From positions 43,462,001 to 43,526,000 of the forward strand of contig OZ260661.1 in NCBI GenBank assembly GCA_965285935.1: a stretch of 64,000 bases of DNA. Direction: 5' to 3'. The stretch is from Ophelia neglecta. Its lineage: Eukaryota. The notes under the pieces were generated by a model. It was not told where the DNA came from, ran no database searches, and worked only from the letters and a program-made list of their open reading frames with translations. The position numbers were made by a program, and so were the translations under genes. Positions 34,745-63,100 of this stretch are shown piece after piece (position 1 is the first letter of the stretch; each line of letters opens with the position of its first letter).

Positions 34745-36412
34745 CTGTGGAAGTAAAGTAAGTAGGGCTGTAGGGGCCATATGCTTGATGAGTGAAAGCA
34801 CAAATGAGTCAAGATCATCAGGTGTTAGATAAACCTGGTTTAAAAGGGCCCATTGCAATAACGTGTTGTTGTGGGCCAACCTTGATACTGTGTCCGCAAA
34901 AAGATTGTGTTTGCCTGGCAAATAAGTAGCTACCACATCAAAATCATAATTAGCTGATAGCCAAAATAGCTCACGAATGCAGTCCATCATACTTGGGTCT
35001 CTAGTAGTGCCCTTGTTTATCATTTGCATTGCGGCTTGATTGTCCGTAAAGATTAGAATCCTGCACCCGGCCCAGGCAGCCGCCCAGCGTTGTGCAGCCA
35101 GTAGCACTGATATAGCCTCTTTATGGTTAATATGTAACTTGCTGAGATGTGGTAGGTCTGAACACCAGTTAGTGTACAGCCAGTCATTTTCAAAAACAAC
35201 ACCAGAACCTGTGATGCAACTATCGACTTCTATAGCCTTAGTCTGCCTGTGAAAAGTAGATCTGATGAGTCTGCCATGAAACTGGTCAAAGAATTTTAGC
35301 CACCAGTTTATGTCCATGTGGAAGTCTAGGTCAAGCTTTAACTTGTGTTTAGGTTGTGCCAAGCAATCTATTGAGTTGATTATACGCCGGAGGAAAGTCC
35401 TACCTCCCCGTACAACCTGTGAAGCCCAGTTAAGTTTACCAGCCAAACTTTGCAACTGTGTGCGGGTAGCATGACGCCTGTCAGAAAAAGTAATTAGCAA
35501 ACATTTTAATTCTCCCACTTTAGCCAGTGGCAGGGAAATTGCCATATCCCTGGAATCAATGAGGATGCCTAGAAATATCAAGGAAGTGGTTGGGGGTTCT
35601 ACTTTATTGTAAGAAATGCTAAAGCCTAGTGACCGCAGCAAACGGAGAAGTTCCATCAAACCCTCCTGGCATTCCTGCTTTGTCCTGCCAATGATAATCC
35701 AGTCATCAAGGTACACAACTGTCATATCATACCCCCTGCGAACCATCATTCTCCGAACACTTTGAGTAAGCCGATTGAAAATACCGGGGGATCTACGAGC
35801 CCCAAAGGGTAGCCTTGAATCAATCATGAAAGTTTGTTTTCTATTTCCGGGAAACTTAAATTTTAGGCCGGTGATCTTGTAATCATCCGGATGAACCCTA
35901 ACTGACCGATATGCACTTTCTAGATCTACCTTTGCCATATAGTAATTCTGTTCTATAAAGTCTAGAGCATTTTGTAGAGACTGGTACTTTACAGGCTCAA
36001 GTGAGGCATAATCGTTAACTGCCTTCTTCTCTGGTCGACTGCAATCATGAATCAGTCGAACCTTACCATTGGGTTTTGGTATAGCTCCCAGAGCACTTAT
36101 AATTGTAGGCTTTTCTTGAACAATTTGATAGTGGTTATTGTCAAGTTCAACCTGTACCTGATCTATCACCTTTTTGTAATTATCTCCCTCCCAAAGAGAT
36201 TTGTAATTATCTGTCTCAGCAGGGGAGGGATCAGAACCTATGTCCGTCAGACGGAAACCATTTTCAATTCCCTCAAGTAAGAAGTCAATATCAGGGTCAT
36301 TATTTTCTAAAAGTTCATTACGCCAATTTTCAATGTGATCAGACAGTGAGTGAGAATGATGGTTGATGGGTGGGGCCGAGCTGGCTAGTGCTGAGTGGCG
36401 TTTTTTGATGCT
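34700..36412 (-). CDS. Reverse transcriptase / RNase H ORF2 of the YR retrotransposon
   Basis: Motifs PKPNGKVRLIHDCS, KVDLESAYR, LPFGARRSP, YLDD; RNase H VDSC, HINHKE, FTDN, NLFADTVSR. The frame stays open upstream of the ORF-track start (36169) to 36412 without an ATG (DFLLEGIENGFRL, DNYKS). Confidence 0.93.
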   Translation of the reverse strand, partial: SIKKRHSALASSAPPINHHSHSLSDHIENWRNELLENNDPDIDFLLEGIENGFRLTDIGSDPSPAETDNYKSLWEGDNYKKVIDQVQVELDNNHYQIVQEKPTIISALGAIPKPNGKVRLIHDCSRPEKKAVNDYASLEPVKYQSLQNALDFIEQNYYMAKVDLESAYRSVRVHPDDYKITGLKFKFPGNRKQTFMIDSRLPFGARRSPGIFNRLTQSVRRMMVRRGYDMTVVYLDDWIIIGRTKQECQEGLMELLRLLRSLGFSISYNKVEPPTTSLIFLGILIDSRDMAISLPLAKVGELKCLLITFSDRRHATRTQLQSLAGKLNWASQVVRGGRTFLRRIINSIDCLAQPKHKLKLDLDFHMDINWWLKFFDQFHGRLIRSTFHRQTKAIEVDSCITGSGVVFENDWLYTNWCSDLPHLSKLHINHKEAISVLLAAQRWAAAWAGCRILIFTDNQAAMQMINKGTTRDPSMMDCIRELFWLSANYDFDVVATYLPGKHNLFADTVSRLAHNNTLLQWALLNQVYLTPDDLDSFVLSLIKHMAPTALLTLLPQVANLGCVRRRSIEM

Positions 36413-37692
36413 TCATGGTGAACAGCAGCATGCTTACCAAAACAAATCGAACATATGTGTATAAATTTGCAATCTGGGAAAGTGCACTGGCCATGATTAA
36501 ATTTTAGACATAGCTGAATGCCTGTTTTTGGGTCAACTGGTTTTTGGAAAGCAGACTGCTGTCTTTTACGATCTTTCTGCTGGGGAGTAGGGTGAAACTT
36601 CATCTCTCTCAGATGGACATCGGACAAATGTTTTATGTCAACACCCCAAGGGAAACCACGCGAGGCTTGGAGTTGCCTGTACTCCCGATCATAGAGCAAA
36701 ACGGATTCGAATTCATACCGAGTGGCTAGCTGGTGAATTTTAACTGTATATGCCAGATAGTTGGATATCCCTCTCCCGTGTATAACCCCTGTTTCTGTCA
36801 GTTTATTAAGTATGCGTGCATTCGCCATACCCCATTGATTTATGGAAATTTTGTGGAGGGCTGGGCGGCGGGGGCCTGCTTCATATATTAATTTCCCACC
36901 TGACCCTGGGACTTCAATCCTCTCTTTCTCAACCAAATAGCCAGGAATAAAGTCAATAATGTCAAGGTATTGAACCTGCCTACCTGAGGAGCCAAGAAGC
37001 ACATCTGCATCATGATATTCCATGCTGGAAGCCATCAGAACATCACGTTGTTGATTATGAATGTTTTGTCCTGTCAGGGCCGTGTACTGTCCAAATTGTC
37101 CAAGTTGTCCAAAATCTGGTTGAGCTTTTGGCAGATTTCCACTCATGCCTGGGGCCAGCACTGCGGTTGGGGCCAGGGAAGAACATTTGTTTAGTCTTTT
37201 TAGTGCCAAAACTTGACTGAAGGGGAGGGGTTCCAAGCCTCCCCCATCCCTTCGGTCGATTAGCTCTCCAACTGCTTCCTTATCCAGCATAAGCACTCTT
37301 TCCATAGTGTCAAAACCTTCGTCCTCCAGCCATGATATGGTATTGGGGCCCAAATTAGCTTTTGTTAAAAAGAGTTTCAGTTGCTCCTTAGATGATGGTG
37401 CCAGGGTTTCCTCAGCCGAGATGACTGTTGACCGATCAGGTATCACTTGGTTGGGTTGTGTAGGGCGCCGACCCCCAACCATGGCTGAAGAGCGTTGAGC
37501 TTGTGGTGTGCTGTTAAACATTGGCCCTGCTTGGCCCACCATGTTTCCAGCCGACACCATGTTCTCTGTTGCTGTGCTACCTACAGGAAGGTGTCCAGGG
37601 GGAAATCCCTGGAAGGCTGTGTCCATTGAGCCATACGCCATAGCTCCGAGCTGACCATAGTTGGACATAGAATTTTCCCACACAGAATTCAT
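36385..37692 (-). CDS. Gag-like ORF1 of the YR retrotransposon (~435 aa) with C-terminal Cys/His zinc fingers
   Basis: First ATG (MNSVWE) sits immediately after A1. Contains VLLYDREYRQLQA..W and terminal CLKFNHGQCTFPDCKFIHICSICFGKH, typical of DIRS-order ORF1. Confidence 0.85.
   Translation of the reverse strand: MNSVWENSMSNYGQLGAMAYGSMDTAFQGFPPGHLPVGSTATENMVSAGNMVGQAGPMFNSTPQAQRSSAMVGGRRPTQPNQVIPDRSTVISAEETLAPSSKEQLKLFLTKANLGPNTISWLEDEGFDTMERVLMLDKEAVGELIDRRDGGGLEPLPFSQVLALKRLNKCSSLAPTAVLAPGMSGNLPKAQPDFGQLGQFGQYTALTGQNIHNQQRDVLMASSMEYHDADVLLGSSGRQVQYLDIIDFIPGYLVEKERIEVPGSGGKLIYEAGPRRPALHKISINQWGMANARILNKLTETGVIHGRGISNYLAYTVKIHQLATRYEFESVLLYDREYRQLQASRGFPWGVDIKHLSDVHLREMKFHPTPQQKDRKRQQSAFQKPVDPKTGIQLCLKFNHGQCTFPDCKFIHICSICFGKHAAVHHEASKNATQH
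36400..36406 (-). promoter_or_regulatory. Predicted -1 ribosomal frameshift slippery heptamer A_AAA_AAC (gag to pol)
   Basis: In the gag frame TCA AAA AAC lies inside the 28-nt gag/pol overlap; pol is in the -1 frame and has no ATG of its own in this region. Confidence 0.7.
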
Positions 37693-37693
37693 A

Positions 37694-38029
37694 GCAAAAA
37701 AAACAGGAGCTGCCTTGCCGCCTGCCCAAGAGAGACTGAAGGAAAAGGGTAGGGGATTCACCAAGAGAACCCTAATGCACTAATGAGGAGAGGAGTTAAT
37801 AAAACCAGTGTGGGTTTTATTGCCTAGCTAGGAGAAGTGCCTAGAACACAAGAGGCCGTTCACTTTGAACTCAATTCTCCTCTCCTCTGGAAAATAAGTC
37901 TGGACAAAGCGCCATTGATACATAAATATAAGTTAGAAAGTTTATGGCCTTGATCAGGGGAGGCCAGGCTGATTAGCTGGTCACTTGTTACCCAGTGAAA
38001 TTTAACCCCACTTTTATTAAAGTGTTATT
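37694..38029 (-). repeat. Split direct repeat A1 (5' end of the element)
   Basis: Matches 33250-33585 at offset 4444, except T37923 vs G33479. Confidence 0.95.
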
Positions 38030-45300: not shown

Positions 45301-47859
45301 AATATATCTTGTTTACAGGGTTTTTCCTATTGTCTGCACCGTGTTAAGACCTTCAGACCTATTGAAGTTTTTTTCAATAGAGCTTTTGTAATATAGTTCA
45401 TACTTTAGACCATTCTGAGGATGAATGTAGAGTTCATCCCATTGAGCATTTCTTTGAGTTGTATGGTATGGCTAATTTCCTCTGCTGTCAACAGGCAATA
45501 TGAACTAAATTATGCCCTATTTATCTTAAAAGAAAGCTTATTAAAAGTTGGGGAAATACACAAAAACTGAGTTGACAAACATTCATTGCTTCCATTTTGT
45601 TCTTCTCCCACAGAGAGCCGGCAAACTACACTTATTTATTAATGGCTTGTTGTGTAACGAGACCAAATTAAGCGAGGTAATGTGATAGTAATGAGAGGCT
45701 GGTACACAACTAACAAATAAAATCACACCTTATGTGGTGTGATGATATTTAGTTCTGCTCTAAACCACTTTAATTTGAATTATGATACAATTATATCATG
45801 CCATGCCTGCTGGATACTTAGGATATTTTGAAGACTGTGTTTGTGCCCTTTTCTTTGATTGTTCCCATATATACTGCAAAAGTTTTGGACAGGTGAGAAT
45901 AATACATAGGTGTTGCCGATGATAAAGAAGGCCCAGTATGGTGTGTTAATGGTCTCCAGGAGAGGGGGAGCCCTCGTGACTTACCATTGTCTACAGTGTA
46001 TCCCCTACTGATCACCAGCTTAAAGACTCTTTTTACATGTAGTTCAAATCTCACACAAAAGCCCCTACTTCTATGGTCATCAGCCATGTACCTTCAATTC
46101 TCATGCAAAGAATACATGACTTAGGACTGTGAAATATCTGATAGAATTAGTAAGCAGAGCACTGTGCCATAGACCTCATAATTACAGAACATCAATATAC
46201 CTCCGGCTTTTGGAGTGATGGAACATGGAGTGGGCAGCTCTTTGTTTAGAAAACTGTCTACATGCATCTTAAATGATGCAAGACTTGTGGACCTGACTGC
46301 AATGGTGGGAGTGTCTGCAGTCATTATACCGCTCCCAGATCTGAAGATCTTTATAAATATTGTCAGAGCAGCCAAGAGGTCTTTGCTTTATGACTTGGCA
46401 GTAATCAGAAGTCAATGAAAATATGATGGTAGCGGTCAACTCTGTAAGGAGGAACACTTTGTCTTAAATACAATTGCATGAGGTAGACCTGTTTTATGAC
46501 AAGTGGTGCCATCCCCATTGAGAAACATATTATTTGCAGCTATGCATGTTGATTGAAGTTAAACACATTCTAATGGCCTGGGGTAGATAAAGTATCTTTA
46601 ATGTTCCTTTTATGGTTCTGCAGGCCAACTCACTGCCTCTTATCAGAGGAAGTAGAATGGCTAAGTGGCATACCAGTAGAGATAATCTTGCTAAAGGAAG
46701 GCAATCAGGCAGCAGACATGATTGCCTTTGTCACTAGTTCAAGAAATGAAGCAGAAGCATGGAAGAGCCTTATGTTTAGCCATGTTAGGATCAACCAGTA
46801 AGGATCAACAGCAAACATACTGCCATTTAACCACTCCTCCCTTAATGTGATCATGTTTCAGTATTCCAAACATGCTTCTTCAAAACCATTTTTGTTCAGA
46901 TTTCATTCAGTTGACTCTGTATTCACCCAAACTTTATTATACCAATTGTAATGATGTTTTATTTTTCTCATTGCAGAAGTTGAAGAGCAGTTGGTGACAT
47001 GGAAAATATTTTCCTGAATGGAGGTGATAGTTGATCTGAGGGATTATAGTCACACTTGGACACTTTTAACAAGTTTACAATCAGAAGGAGGCTGGATTAA
47101 ATTTTGCATTCAGTATCCCTGTCATGTCTAAAACTTACACAGGACATTGAGGATTGAAGTTCATTTAGGCAACAGGCAGTTTGGAGAATCAGCCTTGACA
47201 AATTCTGCCCTGACATTGCACATTTCCATATGCATGCCTAGCAGCTCAAAACCTGTGCATGATGGACCCGGAAAGAAGTGCCCATTATGGCATTTGGAGG
47301 GCAGGCGCTTTGTGAAATGACTTGACGTGGTCAGACAAGTGGAAGATCGCCCTGCGTCTATCGCACCCTCGGTGCATACCAAAAGACCCACGCCTGTGAA
47401 CATTCCAATGCAGGCTCTGCATTTACCCAACGGGCAGTGCATGCCATGCAATCCCATTGTGCAAGCTCATGTGAATTGCATGTTTAAGCTTGGAATTTAG
47501 CTATGTCGATCATCACCAAACACTGACCACAAACTAGAAGAGTGGAGTCAATCAGATGAATGAATGTGTACAATAGAGATTGGCAATCACCTCTGAGGAG
47601 TCATTAACACAGGGACAGAGCAACTTAGGAACTCCAGCGGGACTACAGCGGTCTACAGCAAATCACAAGGTGACTGATGGATTGCAGGATTACATGCCCT
47701 CCAAGCTGCATGGCCTCAAAGAGTCACCATCGCTCTTAGATCCAAGAATAGTGCCTCTTGATGAGAAAACAAATGGTTAGGACCACTTACTGGAGTTTGT
47801 GTGTGATTTATTGTCTGCTGATTCACTGATATGGATAAATCTTTAATTTGATCTTGACC

Positions 47860-48897
47860 ATGGCGGACATTTCTACAAGGGGAGGGCAGATATTGCCCTA
47901 TACCCTGTGTGCATGTACAGGGGCTGGGATAATGTTTAACCTGATATTGTTAGTGTGGCATTGCATCAAATTCAAACCACAAAAATCAAACAAGTACATC
48001 AAGTATGGATTGGCTTTCCTCTACTTTGCCTACATTTTAGCAGGCGTGTCTGTTTCGCTTTTGATTCTCTACAAGGATTTGGAGCAGCCATGGCTGTGCA
48101 AGTTTGGCGGCTTCCTAATACTATTTGCTTCCCAGGAGTGTCTGTGGATGATTTCAGCATGCTGTGTACTAGCCCTCCTCTGGCAGAGAACTCAATTCCC
48201 TTGGAAGCCACAAGCATATGGTGTAAAGGAACACCACAAATGGGGCATCCCAATATTTGTACTGACAATGATTCTCAAACTTGTAATCCTAGCTATAGTC
48301 TCCTTCCTGCCCCTGATTAATCTGCCATTTTTTGATGCCCAGTCAGAATTTTATTTCCTTTGTACACCCATGAGGCTTCCACCGGAGCATGGCTGGCCTT
48401 ATTCCACTATGATTCTCATATTAAATTGGGTGGCAATCATTGTTGCTGTGACTACCTTGATAACCAGCATTTACCTCTCACACAAGCACTCCCGAGACCT
48501 AAAACTGGCCGATGGCGGTCGCAAGAAGCCATGGACATTGGATGCTGCCTTCTGCAGCCGAGGAGTCAAGCAGTACACGCTACGCATCCATGCCGTTTTG
48601 GCCTTCAACACGATTTGTTGGCTGATTGTTTTAATTGTTAGCAGTATTACATATTTCTCAGGAGGATCCGCTATCAGTAAGGGCTATGTGCAGTGGACAC
48701 TTGGTTTCTGCATCAGCGGAACCATAATGCTACATCCCATCATCTTCTTCATCTTTATCCTGATTAGTGAGAAGAAAGGCCTTTTCTCTCGGCCCCGCAG
48801 TATCTGTCAAAGAGACCCAACCATACCAGACAACTGGCACATTGAGTGCCCTAGAAGTCTATTGGCTCTCAGCAAACTCGATGATACAAACGGACAG
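47860..48897 (+). CDS. Exon 1: seven-transmembrane domain, divergent LGR/relaxin-receptor/GRL101-like, plus start of the kinase N-lobe
   Basis: Seven hydrophobic segments; WLCKFGGFLILFASQE (TM3), FLPLINLPFF (TM4), FYFLCTPM..GWPYST..LNW (ECL2-TM5), NTICW (TM6), LHPIIF (TM7). Strong donor CAG|GTAAGC. Confidence 0.88.
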
Positions 48898-51800
48898 GTA
48901 AGCCTTCACAGATTGTACTGTAAATATATCAAGAGAAAGTTACAACAAATACATCGTAAAATGGAACACAGAAATTGAATCTGCTTAAAATTAATGGAGT
49001 CATGTAAAATAACCATAGCACAGGCCTCTGTGCCACAGCATGCATGTTTTTCTACACATGAAAACTCTGAGGATGTGACACTATTATTGGCCAATTTTAC
49101 ACATTGTCCCTAGTGAAATTAATTTAGTCTCTATCAGCAAGTAGGATCTGCTGTGAATAAAGAAAATGTTTGTATTGCTAATCTGAACAATCGACCTTAA
49201 AGTGCAACCAACTGCACTCTTGGCAAGTTAGGCCTCCGGATTTTGTCAAATGCTTTTGTGCCTGGCAGTTTATTCAGTTATGCTGGATTAAGTACCAACA
49301 CTAATAACATTTGCTAAAAGACCTGGATTTTCTTATATTATTACAATTAATTTTAATTTACCTAATTCCAAACTTGTGGTTATGAAAACAAACAAAATAT
49401 AACATGCTATTAAGGGACTTTAATATTAATTACCAGTATTTAAGAGTTGCAACTAAATTAAAGGGCAGTTAAATAAGAAAACATCAAAATGATTTCATTA
49501 CCAGGATTCCATGTTGGTTGTGTTTTAGAAATTCACAAGTAGCTCATCCAAGGGCAGACCATTTTACTGTGCAAATGACTGATGGAAATATGAAAATAAT
49601 TGGTCTTTTCTATAAGCCTACATGTATATCACAATTTAAACATGTCACAAAGCTCTGTCATTTGGAATCATCAGACCACATCCAACTTAAGTTTACCAAA
49701 GGAAATACAGTATATATTTAAGTCTTGTGTATGTGCCTTACCTCCACAAAAGCAAGGATACAAAACAAATCAGTCAGGTGAAAAAATAGTTGAATTATAT
49801 CAATTATACAACACACAATTGCTCCTTTGAAAGCAAATCTACATTTGTACATATAGATGGCTACCATCTTAGCTGTTATTGTTCTGCCAGAAAAATATTT
49901 CAACTACTGATCATCTGAAACTGAAATTCTTTAGAGCTTTCTCCCAATTGTCAGTAACAGTTGATGTAACCTTTGAATAGACAAAGTCTGCTAAGCATGC
50001 TTCATTAAGCCAACCACAGAATGGCTATTTCCGTTTGTTAGATCTCTGAAAATGAATGCCAATCTATCCTATATTTAAGACTAAGTTGTCCTCTGTGGCA
50101 CTCAAAATGGCCAGATGTGCATCCTGAAATTGTGGGAAATAATTTTATGTAGAACTGTGTAGCCAAAGAAACCTCGAGAAAAAAAGAAATCAAGGGTATG
50201 TTGAGAGACATACTGTTAAAAGCAGCCATTATTCCCAAGAGTGAAAGACAGAAAAAAAGTTTCTGTGATGTTTGCTAAGCAAGGCTTTCATTTCCATTTA
50301 AAATGATTCAGTTGTATCCCAATGCGGAGATGAAAGTAATCCCTGTCACAGTAATGCACTGTTCCTATTTTATTTCAATTTATATTGATATAACCTCTTA
50401 CAAATGGTAAATATTAAGCGCACATAAAGGGTATATCCATTAGCTGTGCTTGACTCAGACGTGTTTATGTGTCCAAGATAAATTACACTCTGTTCTGAAG
50501 GGTTCAACATACACATACAATCTACTTGTACACAGTTTATATAGAAAAATAGCAATATACTTAAGAATTTTCACACTACATTAAGTTTCTGATACAAATT
50601 CTAATGTGCCCGCATCACTGATACACAATGCCATTGTGGGAATTGTTTGATCAGTGTATTAGACAAATTAAGCATATAAATTTTCACAAAGGGCCATTCA
50701 TATGCTTTATTTATTATATGCAAGTAAAATGATATCGTTTTAGAACAATGCGCTGTTTTTTTCACCTGTTATCATGAATAAAATGTAAATCAATAACTTT
50801 CTAGAATTAACAAGCAAAAAAAAAAAATTGAACTACAGTCAGTGTGTATAATTGAAAGCTGTTTCATTTCCAATATCTCATTTACTAATTGTAAACCTTG
50901 AAAAAAAATGGTGAAATATAGTTCTATCTACAGCCAGATTGCAATATCTGCCAAAATGAAACTAGCAGATCCACCATGTGTTTGTCAGGCTGGTCAAACA
51001 GTTGCTATTAGATGGTTTAGAATGTGAAAGGTGAATAACTCCTAGAGCCGAGATTTCATACAAATCACTTGTAGTTACTTCATTTTTGCCAAAGCCCACA
51101 TACATGTGACTAATATGGTTACAGCTTCCTCTGTGAGGGTTGAATAGCTCAGCACAATGTGTGGGATTTTGTTTCAGTTCTAGAAAGAGAACAAATTCCT
51201 GACCTAATGCTATTTGTAGTATTTGAATCTGCATGCTCCATATCCAATATGGTCCTCGGGATGTCAAATATAGACAGGAACACTTTCTGGGCAATTTGTT
51301 TGTGTACCTCTCAGACAGTGATGTTTCTATTTCAGTATTTGTGAGTTTCTAATTCTTCAGTCAATTGGCCGCAATGTTTGGCTATCACTTGTAAATGTCT
51401 AATTTCATAACCAATTACAAAAGGTGGGCCTCTTACCTGTTTGAATGAAGATGGCAAATAGAGTTATTAAACAAATGGATACATTTCAATATATTTGAGT
51501 ATAAATGGGCACAAAAGCCCTAGCAGAAATTTTTGTTGTATGGTTTTCAACCAAATCAACACACAAGTGCGTTTAATGTTGTTTATCCTGAAAAAGAAAT
51601 GCATGCTTGTGAAAAGTGATTCAAGATTTGCCCTCTCGCTCCTTTGTATTGGTTCATTCTGATTTGTCAAAGCACTCTACTTCTCGTGGTCTAAACTGCA
51701 TTCTGGTAAATATAAATAAATATACATTGGTTTAATGCTCATGATGGATTTGGTTTGCACATCAAAGGTTAATTTTTTTAAACAAAGGCCATAAAGCATA

Positions 51801-54800
51801 GTTAAACTTTGAATTTGAATAAAGTAAAACAATTATAACTTCAATCAAACTGCTATTACTACAAAGTAGAAATAGCTGAACTTTTGTAGTGGGCCGGGTC
51901 AACATCAAATCCTGTTTATAGGAGTATTTGTTACCAAATGAACTCTACTGTTAATAATGACCCCATCAGTTCTTGATCTTTGAGTGAATAACCCACTAAA
52001 TGGAAACCCATTTTGATGTATTGCTTCTTTCTCTTTCAGGAGGAGGAGATCACTCGATATCTGGTGAAGTGGCAGGACAGCGATGGATCCTTCGTTACAG
52101 GAGTGATGAAGGTGTTCCATCCAAGTTGTCAACAGAAATGGCGAAATGAAGTGAATGCTTTGTCCAAGTTGGCCCCGCTGGACCATCCTAATGTGTGTAG
52201 ATATCTGTGGGACACACCCAGAAACAGCTTCACCTCGGCTATATGTACATTTACTGGGGATGTTCTCAGTCAGGAGGGGAGGTATGTATATTCTCAGGTT
52301 AAATTCAATATATGAACAATGAACTAATAATCCGCCATGCTGTACATAATACCAGCTGCTGTGTTTAGTAAGCCCTGACCTCACTTTGTCTTTGTGTTTC
52401 AATAGTGGAAAATCAGGTACCATGATTAGGTTACTACTTAGGTAATCAGTCCCAGTCATGGCTCGATTCAACATTAAAATCACCTAGTAGTGTAGTCCAT
52501 TCTTGAATTGCTGTATTCGTTAAAAAGGGGCCTATTGAATTAAAAGTCTTCCGTCCAACCTAAGTGTTTGCAGATCAATAGTAATTGGTCAATACATCTG
52601 ACTAGTGATTCCTATACTATTTAGTGTTATGCTAGTCATTGCCTACCTATCATTTTACCTTTAGTGTCTTGTCTGCTCACTGCAGAACTGATTGACCCCT
52701 ACATATATAATATATTTTAGTTCTTGCTCATATGTCAATTGGTGGCCTGTGTTGCAGCCATTCCAGAAAAGAGCACTTTTTCACAATGGTTCTTTTGAGG
52801 AATCAAGACAACATATTTTAGAAATCATTGACACTTTTTCCATTGATGGCTTGCTAGATTCGCTCACTTTATTTTATCACCTGTTATGATAATGTGATGA
52901 GTGGATTGCATGTTTGTCTGATAGACATCAAATTGCCTGTCATTTTTATGGACAGTAATTGATTCTTTTGCTTTCCAGTATTACTTGTCGTCTGCACTAT
53001 GCCACAGGAACACTACAAGAGTTTCTTACCTCCCGTATACACCAGCTGACCGAGGTGGGCCTCCACAAGATCACACTAGATGTTGCCAATGGTCTGGAGT
53101 ACCTACACCAGCACCACCTGGTGCACAATGGACTCTCTACACAGACTGTGTACATGGCTTCTGTTTCAGAGGTGACTATAAATGAACTCACTTTTTCAAA
53201 TATATTTTGAGGCATTTTGGACTCATTAATGTACCTTCTTGTACTTCATATACTAAAAAGCCAGTTGTGCAATGTTTCGATTTAGTTCTTGGTGCAAGGT
53301 ACAGTTAATGTTTTGACTAATTTTGACCTGAAATGATTATTTTGTTAAATTGCAGAAAATTGGTATGAAAGCAGTGATCGGAGACTTTGAGAACAGCTAT
53401 GAGGTGTCTGAGAATACACTGCGTAAATCTCCACTCAGCATGATGAAACAAGATGGCAGGGATATTACCAGTGCTGGAAGTCTGTTTTCTATTTCGAACA
53501 CCCTGGACATGGATAATAACAAATTCGCCCCAGACATCAGATCATTTGGTTTGGTAGTTCTGGAAATGTTAGTGTCCATGAGCGAGTTTAATCAAAAGCG
53601 CTCTGGCTCCAAGAATCTTGTAGCTAAGACCCTAGCAGAGATTCAGGGTGACTTGAATGTGGACTTGACATCTGCCTTGACATCACATAAAGGATGTGAT
53701 GGTGGCTCTCAGTGTAACTGTTCTAGCAGAGTGACAGATATCCGAGTTTGCAAGGATAAACCTGACCAGAGGATAAACTTACACCCGGACTTCGATGCCA
53801 TTCACCAGCATGCCTTCTCCAGGCCTAACTCAGCAACAAACACACCTTGCAGTGACAGGAACTCGGCAGTCTGGCTGACCCCAGCCCAGCTCAGACAGAT
53901 AGAATTAGAGGAGGAGGCAGCCAGGGAAATTCAGGAAATACAAATAAGAGATCTGCCTCCAATACCTCGCATAGAGAAAACAAATGTGGAGGAGTCTCCA
54001 TACCCCAAATCACTGGATGAGTTTGATGGAGCAGTGAGTGAGGATAGCAGGAGGTCAGATGGTAAGAGGTCAAGAGGAAGGCCTAAGAGGCCTGTACACA
54101 GCCTGCCCTTCCAGAGAACAGATCAAGACAGCAGTGAGAGTGACACTGAACTGGTCAACTTGGAAGGGGCCTCTCCTAACAGAAAGAGTAACCGGAAAGG
54201 AAGGGAGAGGCATTCTTCTGGGAAGTCGGATATGTCTAACTCAACCACCAATACTCCTGCCACAGTGAGATCCCTCAAGATAGGGAGTAAGGATGAGCGG
54301 TATAAAGAAGAATCTGTGTGCAGTGAGCCGACAAATGTGAGCAGACCTGCTTCACTCACTACAAGGAATGTGAGGAAACTGTCTGAACAGCATGATTCTG
54401 ACCAGGTATCTCCCTCTACACCAAGTGAAGACATTTACAACACATCTATAGGTAGCCTGGGTAGCTTTGACACTATATATGAAGATGAGGAGATTCCTAA
54501 AAATTCACAGCATATGAAGGCAGAGCCAAACAAGCCCAAATCAAAGGGCAGCAAGAGAGCACAGCGGGTGCCTCATTTGGGCAAGAGGAGGTATGATGAC
54601 AATGGTCAAAAGAGAATGTCAACTGCATCCATGGATGAAAGTTTAATCAGTGCAGACAGCGGTGTTGGCTCCAGCCATTATGATATGTACTCCAATGGTC
54701 TGCACCATCCTGGCAGCCGAGACACTATCTACGCTGAGAGTTCATCCATGTCTGATGGAGACAGCTACTCCTTGTTAAAAGCCATCACCAACAAGCATGG

Positions 54801-56245
54801 GAAGAGAGGCCCAGACAGTGGTATTGAGAGCAATGTGGAAAGTTGTGATGAACTGGCCAGGAATGAGAAACCTCCAAGCCACCCTGGGAGAGGCATGAAG
54901 AAAAGTGCCAGCACTGGGGATGAGCCAGAGGTGTTCCCCGATCTGAGGGTGAGGAAGAGACCATGTACACGGGACCACATGCATCCTGTTGGAGTGTCAT
55001 GTACCTCCCAGCGTGGCCCTCCTAGGAAACAAATCAGCCAGACAGATTCTACCTCTTCCGCCTCACCCTCATCAACACCAGAAAGTGAGGAAAGTCCTGT
55101 GGACCCAGTGTATGAGAAAATCCCACCAAGGATGATTGGCCAATGTGTCAGTTCTAGTATACCTAAATCCAAGTCTAGTTGCTTCCATCACCAGCAGTCT
55201 GGTTGTCAGTTTTGCTCTGCCAGAGATGACCACGTCATGCACACCCCAGAGATAGTCCATCCGGCAATACGTAGTCAGTATCGACATGCCATGCCCAAAC
55301 TGGGTGTGTCAGCAGTGACCTCCTCCAGGAGAATGTCTGATGTCTCCTCCACCTCCAGCAGTAATGGGACTCTGAACTCGGCTGGCAGGAGCGTGGACAA
55401 GAGAGGGGGGCCAGGTTCAGCTCCCACCAGCCCTTGTAGTGAACAAAAAACTGTTGATTTCAACCCTAGTTCACAGGAGAGCTTAAGGGATGAAGATTTC
55501 CACCACATGGCTTCAAACTCCAGCCTGGCATCTTCAATTAGAACTGTTGCTAATTATGGAAACCAAAGCGGTGATAACAAAAACTCAAATAATTCTAATG
55601 ATAAAAACAGTGAGCAACAGTCTGTGAGTGATTCATTAAAGTCTCTGATAGAGGACTCTAAAGCCTTACTGGCTTCACTGGAGGAGAGTACACGGGACTT
55701 AGAGGCTGATCATTCTGGTATACAACAACAAAAATCTCACAGGAGAGCCTATCATGGCACCTCAGATTTACATAATGGGAGAGGTCTAGTGACACCTTCG
55801 TCGGACATTTCTTCCCTTAGCCCGAGCTCCCGGGCTGGTCTAGGACACAAGCAGTTGGAATATTTCCAAGAGATGACCAAAGTGCATCCCTCGCTAAACC
55901 CCGGTGTCATGATGGATTCCAACCAGGACAAGTTGCGGCAAATGCTAGAATTGGTGAAAAAGAGTGGGAAACTTGGCTTTGTTGCTCAGCAGGTGAGAAA
56001 CAGTATATATTCATATACATGTTCCCTAGTGCTTTGTAGTTGGCCTTTCTTGAATTTGATAGGATATTATACCCAATTTTATCTTTTCCATCCTTGATAT
56101 ATAGTAGAAAAGCCTTATTGACATACCATTCCATACATTGTAGTTGCTTCCCTTGTTAAGTGACTGTTGGCTGGAAGACCCTGCGCCGTCTGCTGAGGAG
56201 ATACTGAGGAGATTGGAGAATGCACTGCCCACAGCTTCTGTATAG
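47860..56245 (+). CDS. 7TM (LGR/RXFP/GRL101-like GPCR) - pseudokinase fusion protein, ~1403 aa, 5 coding exons
   Basis: Exons 47860-48897, 52040-52281, 52979-53171, 53356-55992 and 56144-56245 sum to 4212 nt; all introns GT-AG, phases 0,2,0,0. Start in ACCATGG Kozak context with an in-frame TAA upstream at 47836. Confidence 0.8.
52040..52281 (+). CDS. Exon 2: kinase subdomains I-IV
   Basis: ttctttctctttcag|GAG; GVMKVF (VAIK-like), KWRNEVNALSKL (alpha-C Glu), LDHPNV; donor AG|GTATGT. Confidence 0.85.
52979..53171 (+). CDS. Exon 3: kinase subdomains V-VIb
   Basis: ctttccag|T; HYATGTLQEFL, ITLDVANGLEYLHQHHLVHNGLSTQTV; donor GAG|GTGACT. Confidence 0.87.
53356..55992 (+). CDS. Exon 4: kinase subdomains VII-IX followed by a long Ser-rich disordered insert
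   Basis: ttgcag|AAA; KAVIGDFE and DIRSFGLVVLEML; 879 codons open; donor CAG|GTGAGA. Confidence 0.88.
56144..56245 (+). CDS. Exon 5: kinase subdomain XI and stop (missed by the ORF track)
   Basis: ttgtag|TTG encodes LLPLLSDCWLEDPAPSAEEILRRLENALPTASV*, matching the CW..DP..RP....I...L end of TK/TKL-type kinase domains. AATAAA at 56357 and 56862. Confidence 0.85.
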   Translation: MLPLLSDCWLEDPAPSAEEILRRLENALPTASV

Positions 56246-58173
56246 ATATACCATGTACATACATCACATATAATATTTTGTACTTGCATATTATTATATA
56301 AAGAACTTGATCATTTAGGACGCAGCCTGTAAACTTGACAATCTGACTTATCCTGTAATAAAGTAAATATGGGCATTTATATAAAACTGCTGGTCCAGGA
56401 TTAATATAGGACACTGCCAAACACTTGACAACTCAGTAAAACAGTAAACAATTTAGAATCTAAAATTTAGTGGGCATTTTGCTACATCGAAACGAAAAAA
56501 AATCTGTTGCAATTAATTAATTAATTTCTTGCTGCTGGTTTATGAATTGTAAGTATGTAAATATCGTTTGTTGTGGTTGTAAATTCACGATTCGGTACAA
56601 ATTGTCATCGAGATATGTTGTACTTTGATAAGAGATTGTTGCTATTTAAGTTATTATTCTCATTGCTATAAAGTTATAATTTGGGAATACTAGAAAGGTA
56701 TATTATGTAGATTGTGCTACAAGGGAATGTTTGGCCTCAGAAAGAGTAAAGCTGTTATGGTTTGCAATAATACTATTGTGAAATTAAATTAAGAGTTCAG
56801 ACCTAAGTAAGTTCACACTATGCTACCTCAAGTTGGTTTATGTATGGTAAATATTCTATGCAATAAAATGTAAAAAATGATTTCTGTTTGTGATGTAAAC
56901 ACACATGCTGTGTTTTGTTGGGTACAAAACACATTTCTAGATACTGTAACCATAAAACTTGATTGCACAGGTTTAAATTTGATTTTTGCAAAAAAAATGA
57001 GATCCTACATGTTTTTGATTTTGTGGCTAGACATATGTAAGCATGATTCATGAGTCCTAATTTCATGTCAGAGAGGGTTTTTTCTTTGCGACAGGTTTTT
57101 TTTTAAGAATTTAAAAGAGTGTCCACATTTTTACCAGTAAACCGTACCTTTTCCATACCCATCTGCTAAGACCATTTTACATCGCTTATATCCAAATGTA
57201 GACTTCTATGGCAGAGATTAATCAGTTAAAAAACCCGAAAATTGGATATTCATGTGAGCTTTGCCTCATTCTATTATAAAACAAAGGCTTTACAGCAGGA
57301 GTTTTAGCAGGTCCTCCTGTCCTGTTGCTCCTACATGTATATGGTTTATGTGTGGTCATACTACTGTACAATATACTGCTTAAGTCCTTAATGACATTCA
57401 CTACTGCCTTGTAGTAAGTATGACGTATATAATAGCCAGGTTGGCCTTACAATTCCTTTGAAATGATAAGGAAGCAAGCAAAGATTGGTTTGGATGGGAA
57501 TGCCTCCCCTTTGAACAATAGGGAGAAAAGTAGTGGTCAGTTAAATAAGACATTATTATTAATTCATAGTTAGGCCAGAAATCAAAAGGCTAGGTCAGTG
57601 CTTGACCCTCCCCCCTCCCAGCCCCAAGGCAGAGCCTATCTGGCTGTACTGGTACATTACTGATCTAGCAAAACAATCTAATATATTATATGTTGGCTTT
57701 ATTTTACTGAGCTTTAACAAATTGCATTGTCAAAGGCGCAACTCAATTTCAAAAAGGTTGTTTGCACATGCTTATTGCCATCAAAACTTAAATCTTAACA
57801 TAAATGGTTGGAAAAAATTCAGCAGCCTTTTCTCTACAAAAGAGCACCTGTGTTCATTGTATGGATGTATGGTGTCGCCACCATACATGTTCAAACACAG
57901 AGGGTTGGTTATTACAATATTAGCAGATAGGCGCTATTTTCAGTGGTCGAATTGACCTTGAAATACAAAGCCTAATTTCAAGGCCAATACTCTTTTGGAA
58001 TCAGTGTAGCCTACTTCGAAATACATGATTTTTTTGGTTAGATTCCCAAAATATATTTTGAAAAATGTGTAAAATTTTGAAAACAATCCGACTAGAATTG
58101 CGACCAGGAAAGTTCTGCACAGGATCTCTGTAGACAACTTCACATCGTCTTAAAAAGATTCACATTTCCAATC

Positions 58174-60175: not shown

Positions 60176-63100
60176 TCATCTGAAGGAGGCAGGGCTGCTG
60201 TTGCTGCTGCTCCTGCTGTGTCCCTCAGCACCGCCTCCTCCTGATCTGCTGTTCCTGCCACTCTCTGATGTGCGGTCTTGTTGATGGCTGCTTCCTGCGG
60301 CTGATCTCGGCGACTGGCCTCCCCATGATGACTGAGGTGAGGGAGAGGAGGCATTGGCTCCTCCCATTCCCTGCCTAGATCCACTCACAGCTCCAGCATG
60401 ATTAGAACCTGCTCCTGAACTTCCTAGAGCACCACCGAGATTCTGAGGCATGGCCCCTTGGCCCCCCTGCATTCCCACTCCAATACCAGCTCCAGAGCCA
60501 GTGGGACGCACTATACCCACAGGAAGACTGTACGCCTCGCCCCGGTCCAGCAGGGGCATGTTCTGAGGTATACCCTGCTGAGAGCCCAGGACAGGGTTGG
60601 TGGGAGGGAGGTGAGCCATGGGGGCCAGGGCCATGGACTGAGCTCCCCCATCATGGTCCTCTTCCTCTGTGCCATCAGGGTTTTCTGGCAGGTCCATACG
60701 ACGACTAGAAAGCACCAACCCATTTGCCCCGGATGAAAAGTCTCCCTGGCTCATACAGTTACTGCTGCGGCCATTATCATAATCAGCCAGAGAAGCAAGA
60801 TCCGCGGGACACTCAAAGTGGACACAGTGGAACACCTGAAAAAAACAAAACTTGTTCATAGCTAGCAACCTAAATATAGTCCAAAACTTTTTAAAGGCCA
60901 ATTATGTGAACAATCATTTCTATATATTCTTAAAGTGAAATCTGACAGTTTTGGGCAAGACCCCTTCCATATATATTTATAAGACAGGAAACCGGTACAT
61001 GAACCTATTTTTCACAATTTTCAGCAATGCAGAGCTTGAGGAAAGTTTCATGTACCATTAAAGTCTTTTTCACTGTAGATCCTTTGGAGGTTTATGAGGT
61101 ATTAATAATGAGGTCTTTTTTTTGTCTTTATTAAATTTCTATGCTAATGATCCCCATTACAATGTCAAACTGGTTGTTATTCATTCATGTCCTTCGTGAT
61201 ATTTCACTGAATTCTGTTAACTAGTAGCAGTGCACCTACCTCATTTGCTGTGTTGTGCGTGCCCACAATTTTAATGAATATAACTGGTCGCTTTTCAAAT
61301 ACAATTGTTTGCCACGATCGACATGCCTCCTTGGTTTTGTCAGCCACTAGATGCCAGTGCTGTTCATCGGTAGAAACTTCAACGTAGTAACTATAACTTC
61401 GGCCATCACAGTCCCACAACAACAGTCTGTGTAGAAATCAATACAATAAATATCATTTCTTACAGACTATAGGGTAGACAATGATATATACTCATAAAAC
61501 ATCTATCATAATTAAACACAATCTTTACAAGTATTCAATGATAAAATTTTCATTGGATATAAAGCCTTCATGCCATGAGAACATGGAGGTGACATATTAG
61601 ATTTAAAGACTGGTTCACACCTAATAGATCCAATGAAATAGCACTGGGCGAGTTGGACTACGATGGCCCCAGAGCCCAGCTGGTGACAGGTGTACCCAGA
61701 ATCCCAGTCATAGTTCTTAGTATCACCGTTGATCAGAGCATTACGACTGCGACTTACACCTTCGATCACACAAGCGCTCATAGGTATAGTGGCTACATTC
61801 TCGCTGGGAACTGCAAAATGACATGGGGACTATTATTACAAGCACAGATTGTGAAATAGTTGCGATCAAAAAACTTTGCTGATTTCCTACACTGTACAAC
61901 AGGACAGTACAACATTGAAGGATACTTGGAGATTATATGATGATGCATGGCTGTTAAGTGCTGCTGAAAACCATGTAATTCATTTATGTATAACCCAGGT
62001 ATATTAAAGCCAATGATAAGATGACTCTTACCTATAACTCCGTTTTCCAGAGTAACAGACCGTTTTGTGTACAGAGCTTCCAGACAGACCAGATGGAACA
62101 CACGGTTGACTGTGTTGTGAGTTCCGACCACTCGTATGTATTTGACCACTCTCTCCGGGAATCTCATATACTGCCAAGAGCGACAGAGGTATCGAGTATG
62201 GTCGACAATTCTCACCCAGTCCTTGTCATCCATTGATACCTCTATGTAGTAGGAATACGACCTGTGATAATGACAAATGTTTATTATTCAACAAACTGAA
62301 TTTAATCACACTGAATTTGCAAACAAATTTATACTAACATGTACCACAGGAAAGGACACACATGAAATTTTGTTTTACATAAAATTTATTTTCAATATTC
62401 AAGCTCATTTTTGTCTGACTCTAAGATAAGCTTCTTGGTAAGATCCAAATCAATTAAGATTTAATAGTGTAAGACGCTTAACAAGTTTGGTACACCAACC
62501 TCATGTCCCTGTCCCACAGCAGCATTTTGATGGCATTGATGATAGAGGGCATCTCCAGCTTGATGACAATGCCTTGGCCCTCGTTATCATCCATGGGATG
62601 TCTTGTAAACCCACGGTCCAGGTCGTAGTTTTGGCAGTCCCCATCTAACAGGGAGGCCTTCATCTCCCCTCTAATTACCTGGGCACCATGGCGAAGAGTG
62701 GCTACATTCTCTTCTGGAGCTAAAGAGCAATTTGAATTTTTTGAAACTTAAACAGTTACCAACCAGAATGAAGAACATTGTTAACACTTGATAAATCTAG
62801 CAGTAATAAGTATATTTTTCACAGAAAAGAAATACCTGTAACTTCTGTTCAAAGCTCAACATAAGTAACATGTAATGTAAGGCTGTTGCTGGTTGCATGT
62901 ATTCACCAATAACTAAAGATATATATTTTTATCAATTTCAAAATATGAACAGTTGCTACTCACTAAGAAAGCCTCTGTACTTCAATTCCATGTCCCTACT
63001 CTCATTCTTCATTTTGATGGCATCTAGAATGGCGTCTGCTGACACCAGATTGGATGGTCTGACAACATTAAGGAGGTTATCTAGTGACATTAAAGGCAAG

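What the first reader, a model, noticed from the sequence alone, without database searches (positions are those of the whole stretch)
47860..56245. GPCR-pseudokinase chimera: a rhodopsin-class 7TM domain fused in frame to a protein-kinase fold
Seen: the 7TM ORF has a consensus donor (CAG|GTAAGC, 48897) that splices in phase to four exons encoding kinase subdomains I-XI in order, giving one ~1403-aa protein. The kinase exons have no start or first exon of their own, and the residues across the junction (SLLALSKLDDTNGQ|EEEITRYLVKW) fall where kinase strands beta1-beta2 belong. Known: animal class A GPCRs normally lack enzymatic tails; characterised 7TM-kinase fusions are mostly non-animal (Dictyostelium RpkA, oomycete GPCR-PIP kinases) and use other domains. 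Inference: a receptor carrying its own signalling module, like a GPCR/RTK hybrid. Similar architectures may already exist as uncharacterised models in other marine invertebrates; I could not check this.
Basis: partly seen in the sequence, partly recalled or inferred. Interest (0 to 1): 0.92.

Follow-up and report, generated by a model that had tools for sequence, protein, structure and literature searches.

The report
Receptor fused to a dead kinase
This invertebrate gene really does join a rhodopsin-type seven-helix membrane receptor to a catalytically disabled protein-kinase domain in one protein, an architecture conserved in brachiopods and annelids that I found described in no paper.

Summary
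Five + strand exons (47860-48897, 52040-52281, 52979-53171, 53356-55992, 56144-56245) join in phase to 1403 codons.

No RNA run exists for this organism, so the fusion rests on comparison:
- Four other genomic loci have the same exon order, with a phase-0 GT donor at the same codon.
- 25 homologous open reading frames stay conserved up to that donor, then diverge.
- The Lingula (1401 aa) and Owenia (1627 aa) gene models have the same architecture.
- One Logan contig carries the whole protein as a single 1944-aa frame.
- Nothing in intron 1 is conserved with a close relative.
- In a fold of the Lingula homologue, the first kinase strand is encoded by the receptor exon.

The seven-helix domain is a divergent class A receptor. 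A family profile hits only class A receptors, LH receptor first (1.6e-7). The fold's best match is a C. elegans leucine-rich-repeat receptor (LGR; Z 22.4). It has no ectodomain and no Pfam hit.

The kinase keeps the beta3 Lys, the alphaC Glu and the DFG Asp. It lacks the catalytic Asp in all seven homologues. A roughly 750-residue disordered insert with conserved short motifs splits it.

Function is inferred: a receptor with a built-in scaffold. The family is uncharacterised, and such fusions are unreported in bilaterians.

The parts
47106..47382 (+). Conserved non-coding block about 480-750 bases upstream of the start codon. It is a candidate promoter or 5' UTR.
   Evidence: It is 68% identical over 296 bases to L005 9187-9474. 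Its indels are not multiples of three. The role is inferred.
47860..48897 (+). Exon 1, 346 codons. It encodes a 10-residue N-terminal tail and seven transmembrane helices (residues 11-37, 42-74, 77-112, 129-152, 179-217, 224-266, 274-305). A roughly 25-residue linker follows. The last part is the tail ...PRSLLALSKL..., which forms the first kinase strand. The donor is CAG|GTAAGC in phase 0.
   Evidence: (pLDDT 84). Cys80 (48097-48099), Cys168 (48361-48363) and Trp254 (48619-48621) are invariant in 26 sequences. The donor is conserved in five loci.
48898..52039 (+). Intron 1, 3142 bases, with no conserved exon inside it.
   Evidence: blastn against the relative L005 finds nothing between 48901 and 52023. 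DNA contigs of three runs cover it without joints.
52040..52281 (+). Exon 2. It encodes kinase strands beta2 and beta3 with the conserved Lys (52109-52111), and helix alphaC with the conserved Glu (52148-52150). It ends in phase 2.
   Evidence: It is 87.5% identical to the L005 homologue.
52979..53171 (+). Exon 3. It encodes the hinge through the catalytic loop. The loop reads H-N-G (53124-53132) where active kinases have H-R-D.
   Evidence: Pfam PK_Tyr_Ser-Thr E 3.4e-9, above the gathering score. H-N-[NGQS] occurs in 7 of 7 homologues.
53356..55992 (+). Exon 4, 879 codons. It starts with a D-F-E motif in place of DFG (Asp at 53383-53385) and the ...PDIRSFG...LEML helix. A Ser-rich disordered insert follows (about 53656-55876). 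It ends with GKLGFVAQQ, the start of the last C-lobe helices.
   Evidence: Residues 228-1069 of the Lingula homologue fall below pLDDT 50.
53947..53967 (+). Short motif RDLPPIP, which resembles a class I SH3 ligand.
   Evidence: It is conserved as [RK]xLPxxP in 8 of 10 homologues. Binding is inferred only.
54478..54489 (+). Short motif ...DTIYEDEE..., a candidate tyrosine phosphorylation and SH2 docking site. A second one, YEKI, lies at 55111-55122.
   Evidence: Both are conserved and collinear in the closer homologues. Function is inferred only.
54655..54672 (+). Short motif DSGVGS, which resembles a phosphodegron. A second one, DSGIES, lies at 54814-54831.
   Evidence: DSGxxS/T occurs in 9 of 10 homologues. 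Function is inferred only.
56144..56245 (+). Exon 5, 33 codons plus TAG. It encodes the last kinase helix with the ...DCWLEDP... motif (subdomain XI).
   Evidence: (94% identical to L005). The C-terminal helices of the Lingula homologue have pLDDT 66-78.
56357..56362 (+). AATAAA, a candidate polyadenylation signal about 115 bases after the stop codon.
   Evidence: Read. The role is inferred.
60770..62717 (-). Exons of a BTBD9-like neighbour gene, tail to tail with the fusion gene.
   Evidence: They share up to 91% amino-acid identity with the BTB-BACK-F5/8C gene that lies tail to tail with the Lingula orthologue.

Best explanation
A single-copy gene encodes one 1403-residue membrane protein.

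1. The N-terminal part is a divergent class A (rhodopsin-family, LGR-like) seven-helix receptor. It has almost no extracellular tail.

2. A short linker ties its seventh helix to a protein-kinase fold. The first strand of that fold is encoded in the same exon as the receptor.

3. The kinase is a pseudokinase. It keeps the ATP-anchoring Lys, the alphaC Glu and the DFG Asp. It has lost the catalytic Asp and the glycine-rich loop.

4. A disordered, serine-rich insert of roughly 750 residues splits the kinase between its alphaF helix and its last helices. The insert carries conserved short motifs.

Likely mechanism (inferred, not shown): a small ligand, or a change in the membrane, shifts the helix bundle. 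This repositions the tethered pseudokinase. That in turn controls phosphorylation of the insert by other kinases and the docking of SH3 or SH2 partners. On this view the protein is a receptor with a built-in scaffold rather than an enzyme.
For: Fusion.
- Donors lie in phase 0 at the same codon in the window, L005, L001, L002 and Lingula L006, each with a matching acceptor.
- 25 homologous open reading frames are conserved up to that point. They then read V (a GT donor) and diverge.
- Full-length models exist in Lingula and Owenia.
- L003 carries one 1944-aa frame across all parts, with the exon 2 and exon 3 homologues abutting.
- There is no conserved block in intron 1.
- In the fold of the Lingula homologue, strand 17-26 is encoded by the exon 1 tail and strand 34-42 by exon 2. 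The N-lobe has pLDDT 84-91.
- BTBD9 synteny with Lingula is conserved.
- The gene is single copy in its own genome.
- All 9 listed exonic polymorphisms are synonymous.

Receptor class.
- The family profile hits only class A receptors in the PDB. The LH receptor scores 1.6e-7 and a C. elegans LGR 1.3e-6 over positions 17-294.
- VIA-align gives Z 22.4 to the same C. elegans LGR. The top 50 Foldseek hits are all class A.
- The two cysteines that would form the TM3-ECL2 disulfide, and the TM6 Trp, are invariant.

Pseudokinase.

Insert.
- It is disordered. Motifs are collinear across homologues.
Against: - There are no RNA reads from this organism, so the 48897/52040 junction itself is not observed here.
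- The library type of the run behind L003 is not known to me.
- Pfam 7tm_1 does not hit the window's exon 1. It hits only 2 of 26 family members, and weakly.
- Smoothened, Frizzled and LYCHOS score within about 2-3 Z units of the best class A match.
- The DRY and NPxxY motifs and Asp2.50 are missing, by my reading.
- The C-lobe of the kinase model has low confidence. Foldseek on that model gave no significant hit.
- A second Lingula model (P0044) starts after the seventh helix, so a kinase-only isoform cannot be excluded.
- The motif functions rest on resemblance only.
Confidence: 0.85

Rival explanations
1. These are two neighbouring genes in conserved synteny: a stand-alone orphan seven-helix receptor and a separate cytosolic pseudokinase. 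On this view the fused gene models are annotation read-through.
For: No RNA evidence exists in this organism. The exon 1 frame could end 27 codons past the donor. An in-frame ATG lies at 52016. The Lingula model P0044 lacks the receptor part.
Against: L003 has one uninterrupted 1944-aa frame across both parts. In 25 homologues conservation stops exactly at a GT in phase 0, and the tails beyond it vary in length and sequence. The first kinase strand is encoded by exon 1. No alternative first exon is conserved in intron 1. Stops lie directly upstream of the exon 2 acceptor in L001 and Lingula. The ATG at 52016 is not conserved.
Confidence: 0.06
2. The fusion is real, but the kinase domain is catalytically active by an atypical mechanism. 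On this view the protein is a true receptor kinase.
For: The beta3 Lys, the alphaC Glu and the DFG Asp are conserved in 7 of 7 homologues. This suggests that nucleotide binding is kept. Some kinases that lack canonical residues retain activity (general knowledge: WNK, HER3, CASK).
Against: The catalytic Asp is replaced by N, G, Q or S in every homologue. The catalytic-loop Asn and the glycine-rich loop are also missing.
Confidence: 0.12
3. The fusion is real, but the seven-helix domain is not a signalling receptor. It would be only a membrane anchor, or a transporter-like or lipid-sensing bundle, for a pseudokinase scaffold.
For: The DRY motif, the NPxxY Tyr, Asp2.50 and the TM5 and TM6 prolines are absent (my numbering). 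Non-class-A bundles such as LYCHOS/GPR155 score Z 19. LGR4-6, among the closest matches, are not known to couple to G proteins (general knowledge).
Against: The profile hits are exclusively class A receptors. The disulfide cysteines, the TM6 Trp, the TM7 Pro and the TM1 Asn are conserved. This points to a constrained receptor-like core.
Confidence: 0.3

Closest known systems
GPCR-TKL/K and GPCR-TK fusions of choanoflagellates and sponges (eLife 2025, PMC12716839)
   Same: They share the domain order: an N-terminal seven-helix receptor and a C-terminal protein-kinase domain in one polypeptide. None has been characterised functionally.
   Different: That paper found GPCR-TKs in sponges but in no other animal lineage, and it argues for repeated independent origins. 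Here the hosts are bilaterians (a brachiopod, an annelid and this organism). The receptor is LGR-like class A. The kinase is a pseudokinase split by a roughly 750-residue insert. I did not test homology to those families because I held none of their sequences.
GPCR-PIPK fusions (Dictyostelium RpkA, oomycetes; PMC5784254)
   Same: A seven-helix receptor carries a C-terminal kinase-type module.
   Different: Their module is a phosphatidylinositol phosphate kinase, not a protein-kinase fold. The hosts are not animals.
LGR-type class A receptors (LH, TSH and FSH receptors, LGR4-6, RXFP1, C. elegans LGR)
   Same: They are the best sequence-profile and fold matches to the seven-helix domain.
   Different: There is no leucine-rich-repeat ectodomain, only about 10 residues before helix 1. 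There is no DRY or NPxxY motif. The tail is a kinase fold rather than a short cytosolic tail.
Receptor pseudokinases (HER3, PTK7, RYK, ROR; kinase-homology domain of receptor guanylyl cyclases; JAK JH2)
   Same: A membrane receptor is coupled to a kinase fold that has lost catalytic residues and works by allostery or scaffolding. HER3 likewise has Asn at the catalytic Asp position (general knowledge). JAK2, TYK2 and ErbB3 are among the best sequence hits.
   Different: Those receptors are single-pass or receptor-associated. This one is seven-pass.
Split-kinase receptors (PDGFR, KIT, VEGFR) and PEAK-family pseudokinase scaffolds
   Same: A kinase fold is interrupted or flanked by a long disordered region that carries docking motifs (general knowledge).
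   Different: The insert here lies after alphaF rather than between the lobes. It is about ten times longer than the PDGFR insert. No homology is implied.

Membership tests
Protein kinase superfamily (Pfam PF07714 / PF00069) | A profile match above the curated threshold | tested here: met
   Exon 3 alone scores 36.8 bits against PF07714, whose cut-off is 23.1. Lingula P0035 scores 32 bits. PDB kinase hits reach E 5.7e-7.
Protein kinase superfamily (Pfam PF07714 / PF00069) | A complete bilobal fold, subdomains I to XI | tested here: inconclusive
   The N-lobe strands and alphaC are confident (pLDDT 84-91), and the C-terminal helices reach 66-78. The rest of the C-lobe is below 60, and Foldseek found nothing significant. 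The motif order is consistent in the alignment.
Catalytically competent protein kinase | Catalytic Asp of the HRD motif and Asn of the catalytic loop | tested here: not met
   H-N-G in the window and H-N-[NQS] in six homologues. The loop Asn is replaced by T, S or C.
Catalytically competent protein kinase | Glycine-rich loop GxGxxG | tested here: not met
   The segment between the first two strands has no such motif in any homologue.
Catalytically competent protein kinase | beta3 Lys, alphaC Glu, DFG Asp | tested here: met
   Lys and Glu occur in 7 of 7 homologues. D-F-[ED] occurs in all but one distant homologue.
Class A (rhodopsin-family) GPCR | A Pfam 7tm_1 profile match | tested here: not met
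   The window's exon 1 has no hit at E up to 1. Only 2 of 26 family members hit, best E 0.0025.
Class A (rhodopsin-family) GPCR | Remote homology by a family profile | tested here: met
   The profile of 26 sequences against PDB sequences gives significant hits to class A receptors only. The LH receptor scores 1.6e-7, a C. elegans LGR 1.3e-6, MT2 6e-5 and LGR4 1.2e-4.
Class A (rhodopsin-family) GPCR | The seven-helix GPCR fold | tested here: met
   The model has pLDDT 84. VIA-align gives Z 22.4 to a C. elegans LGR (241 residues, 2.7 A). Other GPCR classes reach Z 19-20, so the fold alone does not fix the class.
Class A (rhodopsin-family) GPCR | TM3-ECL2 disulfide cysteines and TM6 Trp | tested here: met
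   Cys80, Cys168 and Trp254 are invariant in 26 sequences. Assigning them to positions 3.25, 45.50 and 6.48 is my inference.
Class A (rhodopsin-family) GPCR | DRY, NPxxY and Asp2.50 microswitches | tested here: not met
   There is W-Q-R at the end of helix 3 (only the basic residue is kept). Helix 7 has H-P-x-x-F (only the Pro is kept). Helix 2 has no acidic residue (positions assigned by eye).
LGR subfamily | A large leucine-rich-repeat ectodomain before helix 1 | tested here: not met
   The start codon lies about 10 residues before helix 1. N-termini are equally short in Lingula, Owenia and L003.
Choanoflagellate or sponge GPCR-TKL/K and GPCR-TK | The receptor or kinase domain clusters with those families | not tested
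I relied only on the paper's statement that no other animal lineage has them.

The most novel reading that the evidence does not exclude
Lophotrochozoan animals have an independently evolved, G-protein-independent signalling receptor. In it a class A seven-helix sensor directly controls a covalently attached pseudokinase. The giant split-kinase insert of that pseudokinase recruits SH3 and SH2 proteins such as Src-family kinases. This would be a natural GPCR/receptor-tyrosine-kinase-style hybrid in bilaterians.
Probability: 0.25. Interest if true: 0.85.

Novelty: new variant of a known kind. Interest (0 to 1): 0.68.

Why it matters
Receptor-kinase fusions of this type were thought to be confined to protists and sponges (PMC12716839), and none has been studied functionally. 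A conserved, single-copy bilaterian example offers three things:
- A tractable case for asking how a seven-helix bundle can signal without, or alongside, G proteins.
- A test of how a pseudokinase reads out receptor conformation.
- A test of whether this architecture arose repeatedly.

It also warns annotators that exon 1 looks like a stand-alone orphan receptor. Nearly all database entries for this family are exon-sized fragments.

Tried and rejected
- RNA evidence. The run search returned only three DNA runs of one sample. Laid on 47700-53600, they cover the introns and show no joints. The junction is therefore untested here. This is not evidence against it.
- Pfam on exon 1 and on exon 4 gave nothing meaningful.
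- Word-indexed protein searches with alignments A2 and A1 added only one useful protein, P0047.
- Cluster look-ups of 15 homologues gave names only for Lingula and Owenia. The taxonomic range of the family, and the taxon of this window, stay open.
- Foldseek on the 1119-residue Lingula model gave no significant hit. Most of that model is disordered. The weak rows were mostly kinase N-lobes.
- Rfam found nothing in 46-57 kb.
- Six literature searches found no description of this family.
- Earlier findings of this scan held nothing on it.
- The Atlas search suggested a resemblance to TMEM116. I could not test this with an alignment.
- Each exon was used separately by reference. The structure of the kinase part was predicted on the unaltered Lingula protein P0044 instead.

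Full report
**1. The observation**

Reading the sequence gives these five + strand exons:

| Exon | Coordinates | Notes |
|---|---|---|
| 1 | 47860-48897 | ATG in a good Kozak context; donor CAG\|GTAAGC, phase 0 |
| 2 | 52040-52281 | preceded by the acceptor ctctttcag |
| 3 | 52979-53171 | |
| 4 | 53356-55992 | |
| 5 | 56144-56245 | ends in TAG; AATAAA about 115 bases later |

Exon 3 alone passes Pfam's threshold for the Tyr/Ser-Thr kinase family (E 3.4e-9). Exon 1 has no Pfam hit.

**2. Is it one gene? No transcript data here**

No RNA run is served for this organism. The three holders are DNA runs of one sample. Their contigs cover introns 1 and 2 without any joint.

They are still useful in two ways:
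- They confirm that the assembly is continuous over 47700-53600.
- All nine listed exonic differences in exons 1 and 2 are synonymous, and all listed indels lie in introns. Both reading frames are therefore under purifying selection.

**3. Is it one gene? Comparative evidence**

*Homologues of exon 1.* An exhaustive HMMER search with exon 1 found 37 homologues. Most are exon-sized open reading frames called on unannotated contigs. Two are long:
- Lingula anatina XP_013386959.1, 1401 aa.
- Owenia fusiformis CAH1791883.1, 1627 aa.

Both are named only 'uncharacterized'. Both have the same layout: seven helices, a kinase-like core, a very long low-complexity stretch, and a conserved C-terminal GxLG...CW segment.

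*A single-frame contig.* A third protein led to contig L003 (Logan, SRR6474597, 6846 bases). It has one uninterrupted frame of 1944 residues, from a start just before helix 1 to the C-terminal CW motif. The homologues of exons 2 and 3 abut in it. This is what a spliced mRNA looks like. I could not check the library type.

*Four more genomic loci.* L001, L002, L005 and Lingula L006 carry all the exon homologues in the same order and on the same strand. The receptor exon lies 2.7-6.3 kb upstream of exon 2. Each has a consensus donor in phase 0 directly after the same conserved motif (CAG|GTACGT, CAG|GTAAAA, AAG|GTAACT, AAG|GTGAGG). Each has a YAG acceptor directly before the exon 2 homologue. 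In L001 and Lingula a stop codon lies just upstream of that acceptor.

*The donor across 26 sequences.* In an alignment of 26 exon 1 homologues, conservation runs to ...P..L....KL.... It then reads V, which is the GT of the donor. After that the sequences become unalignable tails of variable length. A stand-alone receptor would not behave like this.

*No hidden first exon.* Against L005 (about 72% coding identity), the only conserved blocks between 46 and 57 kb are:
- the five exons, ending within a few bases of the predicted splice sites;
- one patchy non-coding block at 47106-47382.

Nothing in intron 1 is conserved.

*Orthology.* The gene is single copy in its 762-Mb genome. In Lingula the gene lying tail to tail downstream is a BTB-BACK-F5/8C (BTBD9-like) gene. 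Its exons match window 60770-62717 on the minus strand at up to 91% identity. Orthology is therefore secure.

**4. The junction**

I folded the unaltered Lingula protein P0044. It starts after helix 7 and contains the whole kinase part. The alignment rows included the window's exons as separate, unjoined sequences.

Most of the model is disordered (mean pLDDT 40), but the N-lobe is confident (84-91):
- Strand 17-26 is encoded by the tail of the receptor exon.
- Strand 34-42 is encoded by exon 2.
- Strand 47-56 carries the conserved Lys.
- Helix 58-72 carries the conserved Glu.

This is inferred for the window by alignment, not folded on it.

**5. The receptor domain**

AlphaFold2 on exon 1 with 25 homologues gives seven helices (pLDDT 84, pTM 0.84).
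- *Foldseek.* The top hits are all class A receptors: the FSH receptor, LGR4, the TSH receptor, CB1, S1P1 and EP4. E is about 1e-5 and TM-scores are 0.55-0.6.
- *VIA-align, independent of Foldseek.* It ranks a C. elegans LGR first (Z 22.4, 241 residues, 2.7 A). Prostanoid receptors, squid rhodopsin and RXFP1 follow at Z 20-21.6. Smoothened, Frizzled and LYCHOS reach 19-20, so the fold alone does not fix the class.
- *Sequence profile.* This settles the class better. The 26-sequence profile hits only class A receptors in the PDB: the LH receptor (1.6e-7), the C. elegans LGR (1.3e-6, over positions 17-294), MT2, LGR4, NPY1R and the TSH receptor.
- *Protein language-model features.* They also point to family 1 receptors.
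- *Conserved residues.* Two cysteines and a tryptophan are invariant. I assign them to the TM3-ECL2 disulfide and to TM6 position 6.48. The TM1 Asn, a basic residue at the DRY position and the TM7 Pro are mostly kept.
- *Missing features.* Asp2.50, the acidic and aromatic residues of DRY, the TM5 and TM6 prolines and the NPxxY Tyr are absent. There is no ectodomain.

The domain is therefore a divergent, LGR-like class A bundle. It is not a member of the LGR subfamily, and G-protein coupling is doubtful.

**6. The kinase domain**

Sequence similarity is weak and spread over JAK2/TYK2, ErbB3, MLKL, IKK, RIPK1 and BRAF. No kinase group can be assigned.

Seven homologues could be aligned across this core:

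| Element | State |
|---|---|
| beta3 Lys | kept in 7 of 7 |
| alphaC Glu | kept in 7 of 7 |
| DFG | reads D-F-E or D-F-D (Asp kept) |
| HRD | reads H-N-G or H-N-[NQS] (catalytic Asp lost) |
| catalytic-loop Asn | lost |
| glycine-rich loop | lost |

Against L005, the kinase core is the most conserved part of the protein:
- exons 2, 3 and 5: 87-94% identity;
- receptor exon: 77%;
- exon 4: 60-71%.

After the ...PDIRSFG..LEML helix comes a roughly 750-residue insert with 17% serine. It is predicted disordered in the homologue. Then come GKLGF..QQ and the exon 5 helix with ...CWLEDP....

The insert holds collinear islands of conservation: VTDIR, RxLPPIP..IYEDEE, DSGVGS, DSGIES, RKKPC and YE[KS]I. 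From general knowledge they resemble a class I SH3 ligand, Src-type SH2 sites and DSGxxS phosphodegrons. That is resemblance, not evidence of binding.

**7. Mechanism**

*Shown:* one polypeptide in relatives, a class A-like bundle, a kinase fold without a catalytic base, and a conserved disordered insert with motif islands.

*Inferred:* movement of the helix bundle is passed through the roughly 25-residue linker to the pseudokinase. The pseudokinase then acts as a conformational switch and scaffold for partners that dock on the insert.

Rivals, with my odds (they address different questions, so the odds need not sum to one):
- two separate genes: about 6%;
- an atypically active kinase: about 12%;
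- a seven-helix anchor without receptor function: about 30%.

**8. Comparison and novelty**

Fusions of a seven-helix receptor with a kinase are known in three settings:
- with lipid kinases in Dictyostelium and oomycetes (PMC5784254);
- with protein kinases in acanthoecid choanoflagellates;

That paper also notes that none has been characterised. Six literature searches found no description of the present family. The family exists in databases only as two 'uncharacterized' models and many exon fragments.

I rate it a new variant of a known kind. It is a bilaterian fusion of an LGR-like class A receptor with a pseudokinase that has a split kinase domain.

**9. Limits**

- The taxon of the window, and of most homologues, is unknown to me.
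- The family's range beyond Brachiopoda and Annelida is open.

Noticed in passing
window 33738-37764 (-): Three consecutive long open reading frames (459, 489 and 330 aa) in a GC-rich stretch. The middle one is a reverse transcriptase (Pfam RVT_1, E 2.5e-20). The last looks to me like a tyrosine recombinase, so this may be a DIRS-like retroelement, apparently intact.
   Followed up: partly
window 47106-47382 (+): A non-coding block conserved with the relative L005 (68% over 296 bases, indels not in threes). It lies 480-750 bases upstream of the start codon and is a candidate promoter or 5' UTR element.
   Followed up: partly
window 60770-62717 (-): Exons of a BTBD9-like gene, up to 91% identical to the Lingula neighbour gene. 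Weaker second matches at 62099-62717 suggest the two discoidin-type repeats. Pfam did not hit the two long open reading frames there.
   Followed up: partly
window 3544-4608 (+): A 354-aa open reading frame that is extremely rich in Asp, Ser, Arg and Lys repeats (...DSDDES......RKKRGKK...). It has no Pfam hit and its nature is unknown.
   Followed up: no
L006 (Lingula) and proteins P0044, P0045: Lingula has a second, 97% identical model on another scaffold (XP_013385304.2, 1119 aa) that starts after helix 7. A 164-aa model sits next to the full gene. These are probably a haplotig and fragmented annotation rather than a kinase-only paralogue.
   Followed up: no
L002 1553-2537 and L005 16569-16586: The receptor exon of L002 and exon 4 of L005 each show one frame shift. 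Both assemblies have very low coverage (4x and 5x in the contig names), so sequencing error is likelier than pseudogenisation.
   Followed up: no
window exon 5 end and homologues: The C-terminus ends in ...LP[TS]A[SA]V in the window, L005, L001 and L002, and in ...SSPV in Owenia. A conserved C-terminal Val might be a PDZ-type ligand. This was not tested.
   Followed up: no
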